The position numbers were made by a program, and so were the translations under genes. Of a DNA stretch of 64,000 nucleotides, positions 205 to 4,212 are shown in pieces. The notes under the pieces were generated by a model. It saw nothing but the letters and a program-made list of their open reading frames with translations. It was not told the origin of the DNA and made no database searches. Each line of letters opens with the position of its first letter. The first letter of the stretch is position 1. Location of the stretch: sequence record MW845758.1. One strand, 5' to 3'.

Positions 205-279
205 GGAGCAGTGGCTGAAAGGTTAGGCGGGTGATTGCAAATCACTTCCATGGCGGTTCAATTCCGTCCTGCTCCTCCA
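205..279 (+). tRNA. trnC: tRNA-Cys(GCA)
   Basis: Acceptor GGAGCAG/CTGCTCC, loop TT-GCA-AA, T-loop TTCAATT, U73 plus encoded CCA. Confidence 0.95.
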
Positions 280-301
280 ATTTGATTCTCTCGAGACTCG
301 A

Positions 302-472
302 ATGAAATTAAAGACCAAGTTGTACATCGCGGCTGCATTGTTCTTCATGCTGCTCGGTCACTTCGTTGGCCGAATCATGACACTCTTCGGTATCGTACTC
401 GTTATCGGCTTTGTCATCGTTCTGGCTTGGCCTGTCATCAGACGCTTTCTTCCGAAACGAAAAAGTATCTGA
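302..472 (+). CDS. Small membrane protein (56 aa), below the ORF-track cutoff
   Basis: ATG302 to TGA472 translates MKLKTKLYIAAALFFMLLGHFVGRIMTLFGIVLVIGFVIVLAWPVIRRFLPKRKSI: two hydrophobic segments with basic ends. Confidence 0.7.
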   Translation: MKLKTKLYIAAALFFMLLGHFVGRIMTLFGIVLVIGFVIVLAWPVIRRFLPKRKSI

Positions 473-534
473 TACGTACTGGGGACGTTCCCTCCGTACG
501 CACTCTCTCTTAAAACCTTTCAGGAAATAAAAAC

Positions 535-1365
535 ATGAGAAAGTTACTCATTGGGGTATTGGCATTTTTAAGCTTCTCGGTCATGGCAGGCGAAAACGTC
601 GTCATCACCACCGGACAGCAGGGCCTGACGTATAACTCCGTTTACGGGGTGAACTTAGCCGGCGCTCTGAACGAGTTCGGTAATAAGTCGCAGGTTATTC
701 CGTCCAAAGGTTCACTGGACAACCTCGACAAAGTCGCCGCGAACGAAGCCCAAATCGGTTTCACGCAGGCAGATGCTTTCCAGTTCTGGCGTGCTAAGCA
801 CCCGAACGAAGCACAGAACGTTGACATCGTTGGTCAACTGGCAAAAGAGTGCGTGTGGGTGGCTGTCAAGAAAGACGGCAAAATCACCAAAGCCTCTGAC
901 CTGACCAACGGTGCGAAGATTGCGGTCGGTGACCCTGATACCGGTTCATACGCCAGCTGGCAGTATCTGCAGCAACTGGTGAAAGAATACGGCAAAACAG
1001 AAACCTACGCCAAAGGCGGTATCCGTTCGCTGGCCAAAGTCGCCACAGGCGAATACGATGCGTTCTTGTGGGTATCGGCTTCCGGTAAGAACAACAAATT
1101 CCTGGACGCGGTCAACCAAGACAGCTCCGGTCTGCAATTGATTGACATGTCCACGTGGAACGTGAACGACAAACTGCCGAACGGTCAAGCCGTTTACACC
1201 AAAGAGACTGCGAAGGTTAACAGCAGCTTCTTCGGTGGCAATGTTGACGTACCGTGTACTACCACGTTGGTTGTGGCGAACAACAATTCTTCCGACGAGC
1301 TGTTGGATGCGGTCTCTACGATTCTCTTGAAGAATCAGGGTCGCGTTCTCGGCACGGCGAAGTAA
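535..1365 (+). CDS. TAXI-family (TRAP-associated) periplasmic solute-binding-like protein
   Basis: Signal peptide MRKLLIGVLAFLSFSVMA. Motifs ITTGQQGLTY, SKGSLDNL, IGFTQADA, IAVGDPDTGS typical of TAXI receptors. SD AGGA. Confidence 0.8.
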   Translation: MRKLLIGVLAFLSFSVMAGENVVITTGQQGLTYNSVYGVNLAGALNEFGNKSQVIPSKGSLDNLDKVAANEAQIGFTQADAFQFWRAKHPNEAQNVDIVGQLAKECVWVAVKKDGKITKASDLTNGAKIAVGDPDTGSYASWQYLQQLVKEYGKTETYAKGGIRSLAKVATGEYDAFLWVSASGKNNKFLDAVNQDSSGLQLIDMSTWNVNDKLPNGQAVYTKETAKVNSSFFGGNVDVPCTTTLVVANNNSSDELLDAVSTILLKNQGRVLGTAK

Positions 1366-2130
1366 CGGTTTTCATCGACTAGTCCGGTAGGGTTAATGTC
1401 CCTGCTGGAACGGGTGTCAGGGTTTCACCCAACTTTACCTGACGAACTGAGACCGTAAGCAGACCAGTAAGTCTTACGCAGTCGGAGCACACAAAGCACT
1501 ATCTCTGCGGAGGTAGGTGTTCTGCCCGTTACGGACAACCTCATTAGGTGCGTAAATGATTAGAGCTCTGGTCCATCATGCGCTTGGCCTTCTTCGGAAT
1601 GTCATGAGCAATATGCGACTCTGGAGACTCGATAGCTATTGGTTCACAGGCTGTGGGACTGTACGCCATAAACCTGTTTCGAGACAACTGTCTCCGACTC
1701 CGGTGTCCTTAACGGACGAAGGTCAAGCACCAGCCCATTAAGCTGGCTCGCTGACATAGGCAACCATCACCCACAATCTGAATGTAACTGATGGGATTGA
1801 GTTCCCAGATGCGAACGAGTAGCTGTGTGCTACTGAGCACCTCCCCGGGACTGCTGAGCAGCGGGGGAATAGGGCCAAAAGGAAAGTAATAGGGGTCGGT
1901 GCTTGGAGGCGCTAAGACCTGTCCGCGGACAGGCTCAGAAGAAGAAGTCCATCGACCCCCGTTTATCAGGAGTAGCAAAATGGCTGGAACCGCACTGATG
2001 GTTGTTGAGCAACCGAAAGATGAATACACGTTGCAACTGCGTAGCCCTTATCAGGACCCACGTCCGGGAATCCTGTTAACGCTGGCTTTGCTGTTAGCTG
2101 CGCTGGAACACCAATTACAGCAGTAACCGT
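1366..2130 (+). ncRNA. Candidate large ornate ncRNA B (~765 nt)
   Basis: Many nested helices with G-U pairs, e.g. 1384-92/1400-08, 1416-21/1438-43, 1484-90/1517-23, 1761-69/1996-2004, 1892-98/1953-59. No convincing long ORF. Lies directly before tRNA-Leu. Confidence 0.65.
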
Positions 2131-2146
2131 ATATATGCGAAACATT

Positions 2147-2231
2147 GCCGAGGTGGTGAAATTGGTAGATACAGGGGATTTAAAATCCCCCGGCTTAGGT
2201 CGTGCGGGTTCGACCCCCGCCCTCGGTACCA
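2147..2231 (+). tRNA. trnL: tRNA-Leu(TAA)
   Basis: GCCGAGG acceptor, GGGGA-TT-TAA-AA-TCCCC anticodon arm, long variable arm, TTCGACC T-loop, ACCA. No intron. Confidence 0.95.
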
Positions 2232-2232
2232 A

Positions 2233-2308
2233 GCAGGCATAGCTCAGTCGGTAGAGCGTCTGGTTTCCAACCAGAATGTCGTCAGTTCGAACCTGACTGT
2301 CTGCTCCA
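2233..2308 (+). tRNA. trnG: tRNA-Gly(TCC)
   Basis: TCTGG-TT-TCC-AA-CCAGA anticodon arm, U73, CCA. Confidence 0.95.
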
Positions 2309-2412
2309 AAATGTGATTACATGATTACACTGTTATATGCGAAGAGCATGTGTGTTAAGCTAAGCTGTTGTTTGTCAACGGTTTATCTTAGTTTATATGT
2401 ACAAGAATTATT

Positions 2413-2497
2413 GGCGGGTTACTCAAGCGGCAACGAGAGCAGACTGTAAATCTGTTGACTACGGTCTTCGGTGGTTCGAGTCCACCACACGCCACCA
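2413..2497 (+). tRNA. trnY: tRNA-Tyr(GTA)
   Basis: GCAGA-CT-GTA-AA-TCTGT anticodon arm, long variable arm, ACCA. Confidence 0.95.
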
Positions 2498-2503
2498 AAC
2501 AAC

Positions 2504-2579
2504 TTTCCGTTCATCTAGAGGCCTAGGATACGTCACTTTCACTGACGGTACACGAGTTCGAATCTCGTACGGAAAACCA
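2504..2579 (+). tRNA. trnE: tRNA-Glu(TTC), copy 1
   Basis: TTTCCGT/ACGGAAA acceptor, CGTCA-CT-TTC-AC-TGACG anticodon arm, ACCA. Confidence 0.93.
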
Positions 2580-2585
2580 AATACT

Positions 2586-2661
2586 TCTCCCATCGTCTAG
2601 AGGCCAAGGACCCCGGGTTTTCAGTCCGGTAACGCGAGTTCAAATCTCGCTGGGAGAACCA
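2586..2661 (+). tRNA. trnE: tRNA-Glu(TTC), copy 2 with a divergent body
   Basis: TCTCCCA/TGGGAGA acceptor, CCGGG-TT-TTC-AG-TCCGG anticodon arm, ACCA. Confidence 0.93.
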
Positions 2662-2671
2662 AACACAAGAA

Positions 2672-2775
2672 CGTAATCCTGCGGTGTGGTTAGTCGCCAC
2701 TACTAGCGGTTACGCGATACCCACTGCTGCGGGGAGTGTAATAGTGAGGCGGTTGACCCCGCCAAGCAAGCAGCG
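2672..2775 (+). ncRNA. Candidate structured ncRNA C (two long hairpins)
   Basis: CGTAATC(2672-78)/GGTTACG(2708-14) enclosing GTGG/CCAC. CTGCT..AGCAG enclosing GCGGGG/CCCCGC (about 2724-2773). Confidence 0.45.
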
Positions 2776-2783
2776 CGCAATTT

Positions 2784-2859
2784 AGGGGATTAGCTCAGCT
2801 GGCAGAGCACCGGTCTCCAAAACCGGGTGTCAAGTGTTCGAATCACTTATCCCCTGCCA
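2784..2859 (+). tRNA. trnW: tRNA-Trp(CCA)
   Basis: CCGGT-CT-CCA-AA-ACCGG anticodon arm, G73, CCA. Confidence 0.95.
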
Positions 2860-2865
2860 AAGTTT

Positions 2866-2942
2866 AGGACTGTAGCTCAGACGGTTAGAGTGCCGCCCTG
2901 TCACGGCGGAGGTCGCGGGTTCGAAACCCGTCAGTCCTGCCA
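2866..2942 (+). tRNA. trnD: tRNA-Asp(GTC)
   Basis: CCGCC-CT-GTC-AC-GGCGG anticodon arm, G73, CCA. Confidence 0.95.
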
Positions 2943-2959
2943 TTTTTAAGTTGTACAAA

Positions 2960-3035
2960 TGCGTCTTAGCTCAGTTGGTAGAGCGCACCCCTGATAAGGG
3001 TGAGGTCACTGGTTCAAGTCCAGTAGATGCAACCA
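2960..3035 (+). tRNA. trnI: tRNA-Ile(GAT)
   Basis: CACCC-CT-GAT-AA-GGGTG anticodon arm, ACCA. Confidence 0.95.
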
Positions 3036-3041
3036 AACAGT

Positions 3042-3116
3042 TGGGGCGTCGCCAAGCGGTAAGGCCCGGGGCTTTGATCCCCGTATGCACAGGTTCGATT
3101 CCTGTCGCCCCTGCCA
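3042..3116 (+). tRNA. trnQ: tRNA-Gln(TTG)
   Basis: CGGGG-CT-TTG-AT-CCCCG anticodon arm, G73, CCA. U1:U72 mismatch. Confidence 0.93.
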
Positions 3117-3120
3117 AACA

Positions 3121-3384
3121 ATGACACTGTCCCCATGCGTGCTTCGGCATAACGCGGAAGAGGGATGGCAGCCAATAAAAGCATCAGTCATTAACCGTAG
3201 CCTTCGGGTGTAGATGGTGAAGACCGCTAAGTGCAGCCTTTAGAACTCCGTGAGATTCGGAGCGGTGTCACCCTTTCAATGAACGTGCCACCCTAGCAGA
3301 ACTGAACGGACTTATCTCCTGCAGAGTGTCCCCGTTTGTGTTCTGTTCGGGCGGGCTGGTTTAGATACCAAGCGTTCACCCTTT
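3121..3384 (+). ncRNA. Candidate structured ncRNA D (three domains)
   Basis: ATGAC/GTCAT (3121/3191) enclosing a UUCG hairpin. GGTGA/TCACC (3216/3272) enclosing ACCGC/GCGGT. Rod GAACG/CGTTC (3281/3377) enclosing GCAGAAC/GTTCTGT. Confidence 0.55.
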
Positions 3385-3385
3385 T

Positions 3386-3461
3386 AGCTTCTTAGCTCAG
3401 TCGGTAGAGCAACCGAATCATAATCGGCAGGTCGGTGGTTCGAGTCCACCAGAAGCTACCA
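3386..3461 (+). tRNA. trnM: tRNA-CAT, probably elongator Met
   Basis: AGCTTCT/AGAAGCT acceptor, loop AT-CAT-AA, ACCA. Lacks the fMet C1:A72 mismatch and the E. coli Ile2 C4:G69/C5:G68 pairs. Confidence 0.85.
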
Positions 3462-3465
3462 GTAC

Positions 3466-3585
3466 ACACGTCAGAAGGATCATCCCCTCTTGACGAAACC
3501 AATAGGCGCGCGGGGTGTTAACGTTCAGGGCGAAGCAATCCTGAATGAAGTCGTCTGACATGTCAGGGGGCAAGCGGCCATTAAT
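3466..3585 (+). ncRNA. Candidate structured ncRNA E
   Basis: CGTCA(3469-73)/TGACG(3491-95) and TTCAGG(3524-29)/CCTGAA(3540-45) hairpins; palindrome CTGACATGTCAG. Confidence 0.35.
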
Positions 3586-3588
3586 TTA

Positions 3589-3664
3589 GACTCTGTAGTT
3601 CAGTCGGTAGAACGGTGGACTGTTAATCCATATGTCGCAGGTTCAAGTCCTGCCAGAGTCGCCA
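3589..3664 (+). tRNA. trnN: tRNA-Asn(GTT)
   Basis: GTGGA-CT-GTT-AA-TCCAT anticodon arm, G73, CCA. Confidence 0.95.
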
Positions 3665-3670
3665 CACAAT

Positions 3671-3789
3671 GGTGTTGTAGTACGTAGTCTCTTCAGAAGG
3701 TCCATGGTTCGAATCCTTGCTTGCCCTTAACGGGGTGTGTAGCTCAGAGCGGTCTAGAGCACCTGAAGAGAAGTATTGCAACGCCACCA
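3671..3789 (+). ncRNA. Circularly permuted tRNA-like RNA (YrlA/Y-RNA topology) ending in ACCA
   Basis: T-arm CATGG-TTCGAAT-CCTTG (3703-19) precedes a loop-closed acceptor-like stem (3720-39) and D-arm GCTC-AGAGCGGTCTA-GAGC (3742-60). Anticodon stem replaced by CTCTTCAG/CTGAAGAG plus a 13-bp terminal helix 3671-83/3773-85, then ACCA. Confidence 0.8.
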
Positions 3790-4096
3790 TCTTTGCGATG
3801 GGACAATCATCGAATGGCATTCCGGAAAAATTTCATTCAACCTAACACGTGCTGATTGTTCCAAAGCAAACACTATACAGACAGAAGCCGAATAGGTTTT
3901 TCTATCGCGCATACGCCCAGAGCCATTACTGGCTTCCGTCTGTTCCAAGTTTGTCAGTCAGGTAAGTTCGTTTTCCATTATGGATACTTGCTGTGTCAGC
4001 CTGACTGGCAATCCACATTAGCCCGCGCTAATAGGTGTCTGGGAATGACCCGCTCAGAGGCCACCCTTGAGTTAAGATTCGACTTCTAAAGCACCA
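3790..4096 (+). ncRNA. Candidate structured ncRNA G (~305 nt)
   Basis: 10-bp helices 3800-09/3853-62 and 3953-62/4000-09; 3877-82/3938-43 enclosing 3884-89/3931-36. 3' end has T-loop-like AGA-TTCGACT-TCT followed by GCACCA. Confidence 0.55.
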
Positions 4097-4107
4097 ATGC
4101 CAGGGTA

Positions 4108-4140
4108 CCCTTCTCCTTAACCGGAGAAGGGATTACTCTA
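4108..4140 (+). terminator. Probable terminator closing the RNA island
   Basis: CCCTTCTCC-TTAACC-GGAGAAGGG followed by an AT-rich tract. Confidence 0.6.
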
Positions 4141-4150
4141 TTTTATTTCG

Positions 4151-4170
4151 GATAGATGTAATCAATGTGA
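4151..4170 (+). promoter_or_regulatory. Putative early (virion RNAP) promoter motif
   Basis: GATAGATGTAATCAATGTGA, variant of GATAGA-TATTAT-N4-GTGA. Confidence 0.6.
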
Positions 4171-4212
4171 AGGAATATGCATTTCAACTAATCGACCATC
4201 AAGAGGCCCATC

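What the first reader, a model, noticed from the sequence alone, without database searches (positions are those of the whole stretch)
3671..3789. Circularly permuted tRNA mimic with Y-RNA topology and a CCA end where the anticodon should be
Seen: the order is T-arm (TTCGAAT loop), acceptor-like stem sealed by a TTAACG loop, then D-arm (AG..GG..A loop). The anticodon stem is extended by CTCTTCAG/CTGAAGAG, an internal loop and a 13-bp helix GGTGTTGTAGTAC/GTATTGCAACGCC, followed by ACCA. This makes a second acceptor-like end (G1-C, G2-C, U3-G wobble, A discriminator). Known: bacterial YrlA Y RNAs have this permuted T/D elbow on a long stem that binds Ro60/Rsr. Differences: I see no GGUCCGA-like Ro site, no Ro60 gene in the window, and YrlA is not known for an NCCA acceptor end. 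Inference: an anticodon-less elbow mimic that could decoy tRNA-recognising enzymes or defence nucleases, or be aminoacylated.
Basis: partly seen in the sequence, partly recalled or inferred. Interest (0 to 1): 0.9.

Follow-up and report, generated by a model that had tools for sequence, protein, structure and literature searches.

The report
Ro60-less permuted tRNA mimic in phage
At the end of a jumbo Erwinia phage's tRNA gene cluster sits an unannotated 119-nt gene for an RNA that is a tRNA body wired in circularly permuted order, with no anticodon and a sealed acceptor stem. It looks like the tRNA-like part of bacterial Y RNAs, yet the phage has no Ro60 partner, so it may be a natural case of that module working alone.

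Summary
Window 3671-3789 (+) folds as a 13-bp helix ending in ACCA, then a 9-bp stem, then a tRNA core in the order variable loop, T arm, sealed 7-bp acceptor-like stem, D arm. Re-permuted with a dummy anticodon loop, it is called a tRNA by ARAGORN.

- **Source:** the window is Erwinia phage pEa_SNUABM_11. The element follows tRNA-Asn by 6 nt, and its ends look like those of the 12 neighbouring tRNAs.
- **Homolog:** one was found, in Erwinia phage pEa_SNUABM_9. There the same permuted core is nested in the anticodon stem of a second tRNA-like shell. Every stem substitution between the two copies keeps pairing (five two-sided, one G-C to G-U).
- **Relatives:** close relatives of both phages lack it.
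- **YrlA-like core:** my covariance model scores Ro60-adjacent phage Y RNAs above tandem-tRNA background.
- **Not a YrlA member:** the Rfam score is 19.1 bits against a cut-off of 69, the GNCGAA Ro60 motif is absent, and neither carrier genome has a TROVE gene.

Most likely it is a stable, non-decoding tRNA mimic matured by RNase P and the tRNA 3'-end machinery. Its target is unknown. I rate it a new variant of a known kind, with moderate to high interest.

The parts
3589..3664 (+). tRNA-Asn(GUU), the last canonical tRNA of the 12-gene cluster. It lies directly upstream and is given as context.
   Evidence: ARAGORN; Rfam tRNA model 75.9 bits; annotated in MW845758.1
3665..3670 (+). 6-nt spacer and leader CACAAU, with U at position -1 relative to the predicted RNase P site
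   Evidence: Sequence. Spacers of about this size separate several neighbouring tRNAs.
3671..3683 (+). 5' strand of the 13-bp outer helix (GGUGUUGUAGUAC). G3671 is the predicted mature 5' end.
   Evidence: All 13 pairs form standard or wobble pairs and are kept in the minimum-energy fold
3684..3696 (+). Internal loop GUAG (3684-3687), then the 5' strand of the 9-bp stem (3688-3696). This stem extends the anticodon-like stem of the tRNA core.
   Evidence: In the homolog the 5 pairs nearest the core show 2 compensatory double changes.
3697..3719 (+). Position-43-like A, then variable loop AGGUC (3698-3702), then the T arm CAUGG-UUCGAAU-CCUUG (3703-3719) with a U51.U63 mismatch
   Evidence: Two compensatory T-stem pairs, and the U.U is conserved in the homolog.
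3720..3739 (+). Sealed acceptor-like stem: CUUGCCC (3720-3726), loop UUAACG (3727-3732), GGGUGUG (3733-3739). It has 7 pairs including U4.G69, G5.U68 and a U6.U67 mismatch.
   Evidence: Pair 1:72 changes G-C to A-U in the homolog, whose stem is 9-10 bp.
3740..3762 (+). U8 A9, then the D arm GCUC-AGAGCGGUCUA-GAGC (3742-3760), then A26 and C27
   Evidence: The D arm is nearly identical in the homolog.
3763..3772 (+). 3' strand of the 9-bp stem (CUGAAGAGA, 3763-3771) and the unpaired A3772
3773..3789 (+). 3' strand of the outer helix (GUAUUGCAACGCC, 3773-3785), then discriminator-like A and encoded CCA (3786-3789). This is the predicted mature 3' end.
   Evidence: The NCCA ending is the same as in all 12 tRNAs of the cluster.

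Best explanation
This is a gene for a stable, non-decoding tRNA mimic derived from a tRNA.

**Inferred maturation.** It is transcribed with the phage tRNA cluster. RNase P releases it by cutting before G3671. The 13-bp helix with A-CCA imitates the 12-bp acceptor/T-arm stack of a pre-tRNA. The 3' end is trimmed back to the encoded CCA.

**Structure, shown by sequence.** The mature RNA of about 119 nt is a rod of about 22 paired bases. At its far end it carries a complete L-shaped tRNA body: a T-loop/D-loop elbow, and an acceptor stem closed by a hexaloop. It has no anticodon loop, so it cannot decode. Its tRNA-like acceptor is sealed, so that end cannot be charged.

**Inferred function.** It presents a tRNA elbow and body to tRNA-binding proteins, acting as a decoy or scaffold. 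By analogy with YrlA it would probably be modified by TruB, TrmA and Dus. It does this without the Ro60-binding module that defines Y RNAs. The target protein is not known.
For: - Anatomy and tRNA tertiary nucleotides are intact. Re-permuted halves are called tRNA by ARAGORN in both copies.
- The gene context matches a tRNA. It is on the same strand, 6 nt after tRNA-Asn, with U at -1, G at +1 and an encoded ACCA. All 12 tRNAs in the cluster end in CCA.
- A homolog exists in pEa_SNUABM_9. Column identity is 85%, against a 69% genome-wide nucleotide identity between the two phages.
- Every stem substitution between the copies keeps pairing: 5 two-sided changes, 1 G-C to G-U, and no disruption. 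Partners slid by 1-3 columns drop pairing from 90% to 26-48%.
- The stem that closes the permuted order is itself covarying. In the window it is extended to 9 bp where anticodon-loop bases would be. A leftover tandem-tRNA junction would not have this.
- My model R1, built on the two cores, scores Ro60-adjacent phage Y RNAs at 46.9 bits (Rhizobium phage TM30) and 37.2 and 34.6 bits (CcrColossus). Tandem-tRNA junctions score 27.8 bits or less.
- Precedent for the processing and modification steps comes from PMC4201824. Salmonella YrlA is modified by TruB and DusA, and M. smegmatis YrlA is cut by RNase P and receives CCA.
Against: - There are no expression, processing or binding data.
- Only two copies are known. 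They come from phages isolated by the same laboratory on the same host.
- The element is absent from the nearest relatives of both carriers: Wellington and Kwan, and Huxley and pSal-SNUABM-04. It is therefore dispensable.
- With two sequences the shuffle control is weak: 27 of 500 shuffles reach the observed values.
- No promoter or terminator was recognised.
- The outer module is not conserved. It is a helix in one copy and a whole tRNA shell without encoded CCA in the other, so what the free end is for is unclear.
- The minimum-energy fold keeps the two long stems but not the cloverleaf core: -48.4 against -40.5 kcal/mol for the tRNA-like fold. This is common for real tRNAs too.
Confidence: 0.55

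Rival explanations
1. It is a true Y RNA of the YrlA class. It works with a Ro60/Rsr protein supplied by the host, or by a phage protein too divergent to detect. It would tether or gate that ring as in Deinococcus and Salmonella.
For: - It has the same T / sealed-acceptor / D order on a long terminal stem. Rfam YrlA aligns end to end over model positions 1-114.
- R1 cross-hits the Y RNAs that sit next to TROVE genes in Rhizobium phage TM30 and CcrColossus.
- In those phages the Y RNAs also sit among tRNA genes.
- Genuine TROVE-adjacent phage YrlA-like RNAs also fall below Rfam's cut-off, at 36-37 bits. Failing the cut-off alone is therefore not decisive.
Against: - No TROVE gene in pEa_SNUABM_11: best tblastn E-value 0.48, and best E-value 1.4 with an HMM built from five phage TROVE proteins. 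None in pEa_SNUABM_9 either.
- None of the 60 listed records among the 89 phage records with a TROVE match is an Erwinia phage, and Erwinia is not among the ten named organism groups.
- The GNCGAAN0-1G motif is absent, as is the GUUGCGA variant present in all 8 TM30 modules.
- The terminal stem is a perfect 13-bp helix ending in ACCA. In the homolog it is replaced by a tRNA shell, so no common Ro60 site exists.
- The Rfam score of 19.1 bits is no better than tandem-tRNA junctions in the same window, which score 22.6 and 17.5.
Confidence: 0.12
2. It is a non-functional scar of recombination in a hypervariable tRNA region: a rearranged tRNA pseudogene that merely retains tRNA-like sequence.
For: - It is present in only one of three Wellingtonvirus genomes and one of three Machinavirus genomes examined.
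- The indel against Wellington is bounded by a GCCAC repeat.
- tRNA content and order differ greatly between these phages.
- The neighbouring tRNA-Asn has exchanged its whole acceptor stem. The outer helix faintly resembles the Wellington tRNA-Asn acceptor.
Against: - All tertiary-interaction nucleotides are intact.
- All stem differences between the two copies keep pairing (five two-sided changes, one G-C to G-U).
- Both copies have extra pairing that a tandem-tRNA junction lacks. One is an acceptor sealed without a discriminator-CCA. The other is a closing stem extended through the place of the anticodon loop.
- The ends are precisely tRNA-like.
- The core is conserved well above the genome average.
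Confidence: 0.2
3. It is a circularly permuted tRNA gene of the Cyanidioschyzon kind, or an intron-containing tRNA. Its transcript would be rearranged or spliced into a working tRNA.
For: The 3' half precedes the 5' half, and re-permutation gives an ARAGORN tRNA. ARAGORN in intron mode can force a tRNA with a 58-nt 'intron' onto the pEa_SNUABM_9 locus.
Against: - There are no anticodon-loop nucleotides to restore. The positions beyond the 5-bp anticodon-like stem are paired: A97-U22 through A101-U18.
- The junction is a 4x1 internal loop in the window and a 2x2 loop in the homolog. Neither is a bulge-helix-bulge motif.
- No U33-type loop can be derived in the homolog.
- From general knowledge, bacteria and their phages are not known to have the splicing endonuclease pathway, and 76-89 nt is far too small for a group I intron.
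Confidence: 0.02
4. The free end is a chargeable minihelix. The RNA would be aminoacylated at A3789 and act as an aminoacyl carrier or as an aaRS/EF-Tu sponge.
For: The end has a 7-bp acceptor-like terminus with G1-C72, G2-C71, an A discriminator and CCA. From general knowledge, minihelices can be charged by some synthetases.
Against: - There is no G3.U70. The pair is U3.G70, the wrong orientation for AlaRS.
- Resemblance to the phage tRNA-Tyr acceptor (9 of 15 positions) is no better than to tRNA-Cys (8 of 15).
- The homolog's free end has a different sequence (U1-A72 ...) and no encoded CCA. No acceptor identity is conserved.
Confidence: 0.05

Closest known systems
YrlA (Y RNA-like A; Rfam RF02553): bacterial and phage Y RNAs with a tRNA-like domain (Chen et al. 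2014, PMC4201824)
   Same: It has the T arm, a sealed acceptor-like stem-loop and a D arm in that permuted order, on a long stem formed by the 5' and 3' ends. tRNA tertiary nucleotides are retained, including the 15:48 Levitt pair. In phages these RNAs are found among tRNA genes. Model R1 cross-hits TROVE-adjacent phage YrlA-like RNAs at 35-47 bits.
   Different: It lacks the GNCGAAN0-1G motif. Neither carrier genome has a Ro60/TROVE gene within 4 kb or anywhere else. It scores 19.1 bits against a gathering score of 69. The terminal stem is a perfect 13-bp helix with an encoded ACCA, or a whole tRNA shell in the homolog. It has a short 5-nt variable loop and no V arm.
M. smegmatis YrlA, which is cut by RNase P and receives CCA (PMC4201824)
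   Same: It has a 7-bp acceptor-like stem in a permuted tRNA-like domain. It is predicted to depend on RNase P and on CCA-end maturation.
   Different: In M. smegmatis the cut and the CCA lie in the sealed acceptor loop, splitting the RNA in two. Here the CCA is encoded at the foot of the long stem. Whether the sealed stem is also cut (before G3733) is unknown. The homolog's stem is 9-10 bp, which argues against a conserved cut.
Phage T4 stable RNAs species 1 and 2 (rnaC and rnaD), at the end of the T4 tRNA cluster
   Same: They are non-tRNA small RNAs of 119-139 nt encoded directly after the last tRNA of a phage tRNA cluster on the same strand, with function still unknown. rnaC carries a T arm.
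   Different: There is no sequence or structural homology. R1 finds only tandem-tRNA background in the T4 region. The T4 RNAs are not permuted tRNAs.
Circularly permuted tRNA genes of Cyanidioschyzon merolae (general knowledge)
   Same: At gene level the 3' half lies upstream of the 5' half, joined through the acceptor ends.
   Different: Those mature into real tRNAs through a bulge-helix-bulge cut and a circular intermediate. Here there is no anticodon loop to restore and no such motif.

Membership tests
YrlA / bacterial Y RNA (RF02553) | tRNA-like domain with the T arm, an acceptor-like stem-loop and the D arm in that order, on a stem formed by the RNA ends | tested here: met
   The YrlA model aligns over positions 1-114 with the arms in register.
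YrlA / bacterial Y RNA (RF02553) | GNCGAAN0-1G motif near the 5' end, the presumed Ro60/Rsr contact (PMC4201824) | tested here: not met
   A regular-expression search finds none in the element or in the pEa_SNUABM_9 homolog. The TM30 variant GUUGCGA (8 of 8 modules) is also absent.
YrlA / bacterial Y RNA (RF02553) | Encoded within about 4 kb of a Ro60 (TROVE) gene on the same strand (PMC4201824) | tested here: not met
   There is no TROVE homolog in the whole pEa_SNUABM_11 genome (tblastn best E 0.48; 5-sequence HMM best E 1.4). There is none in pEa_SNUABM_9 either.
YrlA / bacterial Y RNA (RF02553) | Reaches Rfam's gathering score | tested here: not met
   19.1 bits against 69. Tandem-tRNA junctions in the same window score 22.6 and 17.5. 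TROVE-adjacent phage YrlA-like RNAs also reach only 36-37 bits.
YrlA / bacterial Y RNA (RF02553) | Bound by Ro60/Rsr, possibly supplied by the host | not testable with these tools
   No E. amylovora genome was accessible.
Canonical tRNA (RF00005) | Cloverleaf in normal order with a 7-nt anticodon loop and a free acceptor end | tested here: not met
   ARAGORN and Rfam's tRNA model do not call it. There is no anticodon loop. It is called a tRNA only after artificial re-permutation.
Permuted tRNA genes (Cyanidioschyzon type) | Permuted halves whose ends form a bulge-helix-bulge motif and restore an anticodon loop after processing | tested here: not met
   The halves are permuted (met), but the junction is a 9-bp stem plus a 4x1 internal loop. 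No loop nucleotides are available.
T4-type stable RNAs (rnaC / rnaD) | Homology to T4 species 1 or species 2 RNA | tested here: not met
   R1 gives no match on rnaC or rnaD apart from an 11-nt stretch of rnaC's T loop (6.8 bits, E 1.4), and the folds differ. Only the genomic context is alike.
tmRNA | tRNA-like domain with a free alanine-type acceptor, plus a tag reading frame | tested here: not met
   ARAGORN's tmRNA search of the window found none. The pair is U3.G70, not G3.U70.

The most novel reading that the evidence does not exclude
These two RNAs may represent an undescribed class of phage RNAs: Ro60-independent 'tRNA-in-tRNA' or 'tRNA-on-a-stick' chimeras. They would be built from a permuted tRNA body fused through its anticodon stem to a second tRNA-like processing module. 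Phages would carry them in their tRNA islands as accessory weapons. One possible role is as uncleavable decoys that soak up host tRNA-targeting defence or toxin proteins, or tRNA-processing enzymes, that recognise the elbow and body rather than the anticodon. If so, the tRNA-like domain of Y RNAs has a function of its own, separable from Ro60.
Probability: 0.2. Interest if true: 0.8.

Novelty: new variant of a known kind. Interest (0 to 1): 0.6.

Why it matters
What the tRNA-like domain of bacterial Y RNAs does has been open since it was described in 2014. The authors could only suggest nuclease protection or interaction with tRNA-binding factors (PMC4201824).

A natural RNA that keeps only that domain, drops the Ro60 site, sits in a phage without Ro60 and is plugged into the tRNA maturation pathway would make the question directly testable. 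Natural 'deletion' relatives (Wellington, Kwan) exist as controls.

It also adds to the evidence that phage tRNA islands hold more than tRNAs. The second carrier has two adjacent tRNA-like RNAs without anticodons that no annotation pipeline reports.

Practically, it shows that tRNA finders and Rfam thresholds miss such genes. It also shows that the YrlA model gives similar low scores on ordinary tandem-tRNA junctions.

Tried and rejected
- **Rfam at gathering and at permissive thresholds.** Only a sub-threshold YrlA match was found.
- **Search for relatives.**
  - blastn in 'near' and 'distant' modes against 50,697 phage records gave one homolog.
  - Exact and gapped pattern scans of IMG/VR, five in all, gave nothing related (checked with R1).
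  - Two scans of JGI metagenomes gave nothing related.
  - One scan of GTDB genomes gave nothing related.
  - The loci these scans returned (L018-L022, L028-L050) are unrelated.
- **R1 on relatives and on T4.** The tRNA regions of Wellington, Kwan, Huxley, pSal-SNUABM-04, pEa_SNUABM_29 and T4 give only tandem-tRNA background.
- **Second copy.** There is none in the carrier genome.
- **Ro60.** None in either carrier genome.
- **Co-transferred partner gene.** A comparison of the two carrier genomes shows no segment of unusually high identity apart from a tRNA-Ile.
- **Neighbouring ORFs.** None has a tRNA-related Pfam domain.
- **Tyr-type acceptor identity.** Rejected: 9 of 15 positions against 8 of 15 for tRNA-Cys.
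- **Intron or permuted-gene reading.** Rejected for lack of any anticodon-loop nucleotides.
- **Promoter and terminator scan.** Uninformative.
- **Host Ro60.** It could not be checked. The supplement of PMC4201824 is not held, and the literature search found nothing on Erwinia.

Full report
**Where we are.** The window is the first 64 kb of Erwinia phage pEa_SNUABM_11 (MW845758.1, 251,480 bp, genus Wellingtonvirus, host Erwinia amylovora), at 100% identity. Positions 205-3664 hold 12 tRNA genes on the + strand. The finding, 3671-3789, lies 6 nt after the last of them, tRNA-Asn (3589-3664). It sits in a stretch that the GenBank record leaves unannotated. No plausible ORF covers it.

| Feature | Window coordinates | Note |
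|---|---|---|
| Outer helix, 13 bp | 3671-3683 with 3773-3785 | three wobble pairs |
| ACCA | 3786-3789 | |
| Internal loop | 3684-3687 (GUAG) and A3772 | |
| Inner stem, 9 bp | 3688-3696 with 3763-3771 | |
| Variable loop AGGUC | 3698-3702 | |
| T arm CAUGG-UUCGAAU-CCUUG | 3703-3719 | U.U at tRNA positions 51:63 |
| Acceptor-like stem, 7 bp | 3720-3726 with 3733-3739 | U.U at 6:67 |
| Sealing loop UUAACG | 3727-3732 | |
| U8 A9 | 3740-3741 | |
| D arm GCUC-AGAGCGGUCUA-GAGC | 3742-3760 | |

The nucleotides that build the tRNA L-shape are all there: U8, A14, G15:C48, G18 G19, A21, G46 with G22:C13, G53, U54 U55 C56, A58 and C61.

The minimum-energy fold has a z-score of -4.58, and none of 200 shuffles folds as well. 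It keeps both long stems but not the cloverleaf core. The tRNA-like fold costs -40.5 kcal/mol against -48.4 for the minimum, which is common for real tRNAs as well.

The clearest test was to put the two halves back in normal order around a dummy 7-nt anticodon loop. ARAGORN then calls a tRNA with the expected arms. In its native order neither ARAGORN nor Rfam's tRNA model reports it.

**Ends like a tRNA gene.** All 12 tRNAs of the cluster end in an encoded CCA and are separated by short spacers. The element has the leader CACAAU (U at -1), starts with G, and ends in A-CCA.

A 13-bp helix with NCCA is about the length of the 12-bp acceptor/T-arm stack. Such a minihelix is a known minimal RNase P substrate (general knowledge). 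I therefore read the ACCA as the normal maturation signal of this cluster, not as a sign of charging.

**A homolog, and what it shows.** A sensitive blastn against 50,697 phage records found one relative, in Erwinia phage pEa_SNUABM_9 (MW812341.1, genus Machinavirus). It lies in an unannotated gap between tRNA-Phe and tRNA-Ile.

- The permuted core (L004 4000-4081) aligns with window 3692-3767 at 85% column identity.
- Every substitution in a stem keeps pairing. Five are two-sided changes: two in the closing stem, two in the T stem, one in the acceptor-like stem. One more is G-C to G-U. No pair is broken.
- Both U.U mismatches are conserved.
- Sliding the 3' partners by 1-3 columns drops pairing from 90% to 26-48%. 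With only two sequences the shuffle control is weak: 27 of 500 shuffles reach the observed values.

The two genomes average 69% nucleotide identity over about 100 kb. Apart from a tRNA-Ile, no segment reaches 84% over at least 60 nt in that blastn comparison. The core is therefore conserved at about the level of a tRNA.

The outer module is quite different. In pEa_SNUABM_9 the core is set into the anticodon stem (UGACA/UGUCA, joined through a 2x2 loop) of a second tRNA-like shell. That shell has its own 8-bp acceptor stem, D arm and T arm, and no encoded CCA. The result is a dumbbell of two tRNA bodies joined anticodon stem to anticodon stem.

What the two RNAs share is:

1. the permuted, sealed, anticodon-less tRNA body;
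2. an outer module that offers a tRNA-like free end.

**Not a leftover tandem-tRNA junction.** The piece from the anticodon loop of one tRNA to that of the next also has T arm, spacer and D arm in this order. Such junctions give low-scoring hits to the YrlA model (22.6 and 17.5 bits in this window) and to my model R1 (27.8 bits or less).

The element differs in three ways:

- The acceptor strands are joined by a short loop, without a discriminator and CCA.
- In the homolog the pairing runs on for 2-3 more pairs beyond position 1:72.
- In the window the closing stem runs on for five pairs (A97-U22 to A101-U18) where anticodon-loop bases would be.

**Distribution.**

- The element is missing from the closest relatives, Wellington and Kwan. 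There tRNA-Asn is followed directly by the sequence that follows the element here. The indel of about 125 nt is bounded by a GCCAC repeat.
- R1 finds no copy in Huxley, pSal-SNUABM-04 or pEa_SNUABM_29, nor a second copy in the carrier genome.
- Pattern scans of IMG/VR, JGI metagenomes and GTDB genomes found nothing related.

It is therefore a rare accessory element of a very variable tRNA region.

**Is it a Y RNA?** The topology is that of YrlA as defined by Chen et al. (PMC4201824). The similarity goes beyond general tRNA-likeness:

- R1 scores the unannotated RNAs that sit upstream of the TROVE gene of Rhizobium phage TM30 at 46.9 bits. It scores those of Caulobacter phage CcrColossus at 37.2, 34.6 and 25.7 bits. 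The first three are above the tandem-junction background.
- Those phage Y RNAs also sit among tRNA genes.

The features that define the family fail, however:

- The GNCGAAN0-1G motif is absent from both copies, as is the GUUGCGA variant present in all eight TM30 modules.
- The terminal stem is a perfect helix, and it is replaced by a tRNA shell in the homolog.
- Rfam scores 19.1 bits against a cut-off of 69. TROVE-adjacent phage YrlAs also reach only 36-37 bits.
- Neither carrier genome has a TROVE gene. For pEa_SNUABM_11 the best tblastn E-value is 0.48, and the best E-value with an HMM built from five diverse phage TROVE proteins is 1.4. For pEa_SNUABM_9 the HMM's best E-value is 1.0.

Whether E. 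amylovora has an Rsr could not be checked with these tools.

**Other comparisons.**

- *T4 rnaC and rnaD.* They occupy the same kind of place, directly after the last tRNA, at 139 and 119 nt with function unknown. They are not homologous and are not permuted tRNAs.
- *Permuted tRNA genes of red algae.* They share the gene order but mature into real tRNAs. Here nothing can supply an anticodon loop.
- *Acceptor identity.* The free-end helix has U3.G70, not G3.U70. Its likeness to the phage tRNA-Tyr acceptor (9 of 15 positions) is no better than to tRNA-Cys (8 of 15). It is not shared by the homolog.

**Most likely mechanism.**

- *Shown:* a tRNA-derived, permuted, anticodon-less tRNA body under structural constraint, with the ends of a tRNA gene, in a tRNA operon, without Ro60 in the phage.
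- *Inferred:* co-transcription with the cluster, a 5' cut by RNase P before G3671, and 3' trimming to CCA. Also inferred: folding into an L-shape on a rod of about 22 bp, and modification of the T and D loops by host enzymes, as shown for Salmonella YrlA. The function would be a non-decoding mimic that occupies a protein recognising the tRNA elbow or body.

I cannot name the target. A host tRNA-directed defence or toxin protein, or a tRNA-processing enzyme, are reasonable candidates. I give about 0.55 to 'functional, processed tRNA mimic', 0.2 to 'non-functional recombination scar' and 0.12 to 'true Y RNA using a host Ro60'. The remaining rivals get a few percent each.

**Verdict.** The element works like the tRNA-like domain of YrlA but does not meet the membership criteria of that family. 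I class it as a new variant of a known kind.

Interest is moderate to high (0.6). It offers a natural, Ro60-free version of a module whose role has been unknown since 2014, and the nested tRNA-in-tRNA relative is unusual. Against this, there are only two copies and no expression data.

Noticed in passing
L004 3967-4117 (Erwinia phage pEa_SNUABM_9, MW812341.1, about 69743-69893, minus strand): A 'tRNA inside a tRNA'. An outer tRNA-like shell (8-bp acceptor, D arm, T arm, no encoded CCA) has its anticodon loop replaced by the permuted tRNA core. The result is a dumbbell of two tRNA bodies. It is unannotated.
   Followed up: yes
L004 3841-3961: A second unannotated tRNA-like RNA without an anticodon lies just upstream of the dumbbell. 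It has an acceptor stem, a D arm, a hairpin of about 58 nt in place of the anticodon arm, a T arm and GCCA. The minimum-energy fold gives this cloverleaf. No homolog was found in the loci held.
   Followed up: partly
L005 2221-3408 (Rhizobium phage RHph_TM30, MN988521.1): There is an unannotated array of about 8 Y-RNA-like modules, each starting with GUUGCGA. It lies between a tRNA-Leu and the TROVE gene, inside a tRNA cluster. Two modules reach 36-37 bits on Rfam YrlA and one reaches 46.9 bits on R1.
   Followed up: partly
L012 1001-1744 (Caulobacter phage CcrColossus, JX100810.1): R1 finds four permuted-tRNA-like hits upstream of the TROVE gene. One of them (1175-1275) overlaps the feature annotated as tRNA-Gln (1143-1210), which may be part of a Y RNA rather than a tRNA.
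   Followed up: no
window 3589-3664 compared with L002 3193-3270: tRNA-Asn of this phage and of Wellington share the same body, but all 7 acceptor-stem pairs differ (GACUCUG/CAGAGUC against UGGUGAU/AUCACCA). The 5' strand of the element's outer helix, (u)GGUGUUGUAGU, faintly resembles the 5' end of Wellington's tRNA-Asn, (u)GGUGAUUAGUU.
   Followed up: partly
window 3117-3385, 3462-3588, 2662-2783, 2309-2412: These are long unannotated gaps inside the tRNA cluster with several UUCG- and GNRA-type hairpins. There is no Rfam match. Folding z-scores are weak: -1.17, -1.55, -0.40 and -2.00.
   Followed up: partly
window 3790-4212, hairpin arms 3877-3889 and 3931-3943: The 423-nt intergenic stretch after the element is conserved in Wellington and Kwan. 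It contains a long hairpin, ACAGACAGAAGCC...GGCUUCCGUCUGU. It could be another RNA or a regulatory site.
   Followed up: no
window 2911-2984 and 2203-2257: Rfam's YrlA model gives partial hits of 22.6 and 17.5 bits on ordinary tandem-tRNA junctions. Low-scoring YrlA hits in tRNA clusters are therefore not evidence by themselves.
   Followed up: yes
window 2504-2579 and 2586-2661: Two adjacent tRNA-Glu(UUC) genes have different sequences, and both start with U1 (UUUCCGU..., UCUCCCA...).
   Followed up: no
window 535-1365: The phage ORF beside the tRNA cluster matches the NMT1-like / periplasmic solute-binding family (PF16868, E 8.7e-13). This is an odd gene for a phage.
   Followed up: no
L019 (metagenome contig Ga0123355_10186732): This contig carries a tandem repeat of about 230 bp. 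Each unit holds a T-arm-like hairpin followed by a CUUGCC/GGCAAG hairpin. It is probably a tRNA-derived repeat and is unrelated to the finding.
   Followed up: no
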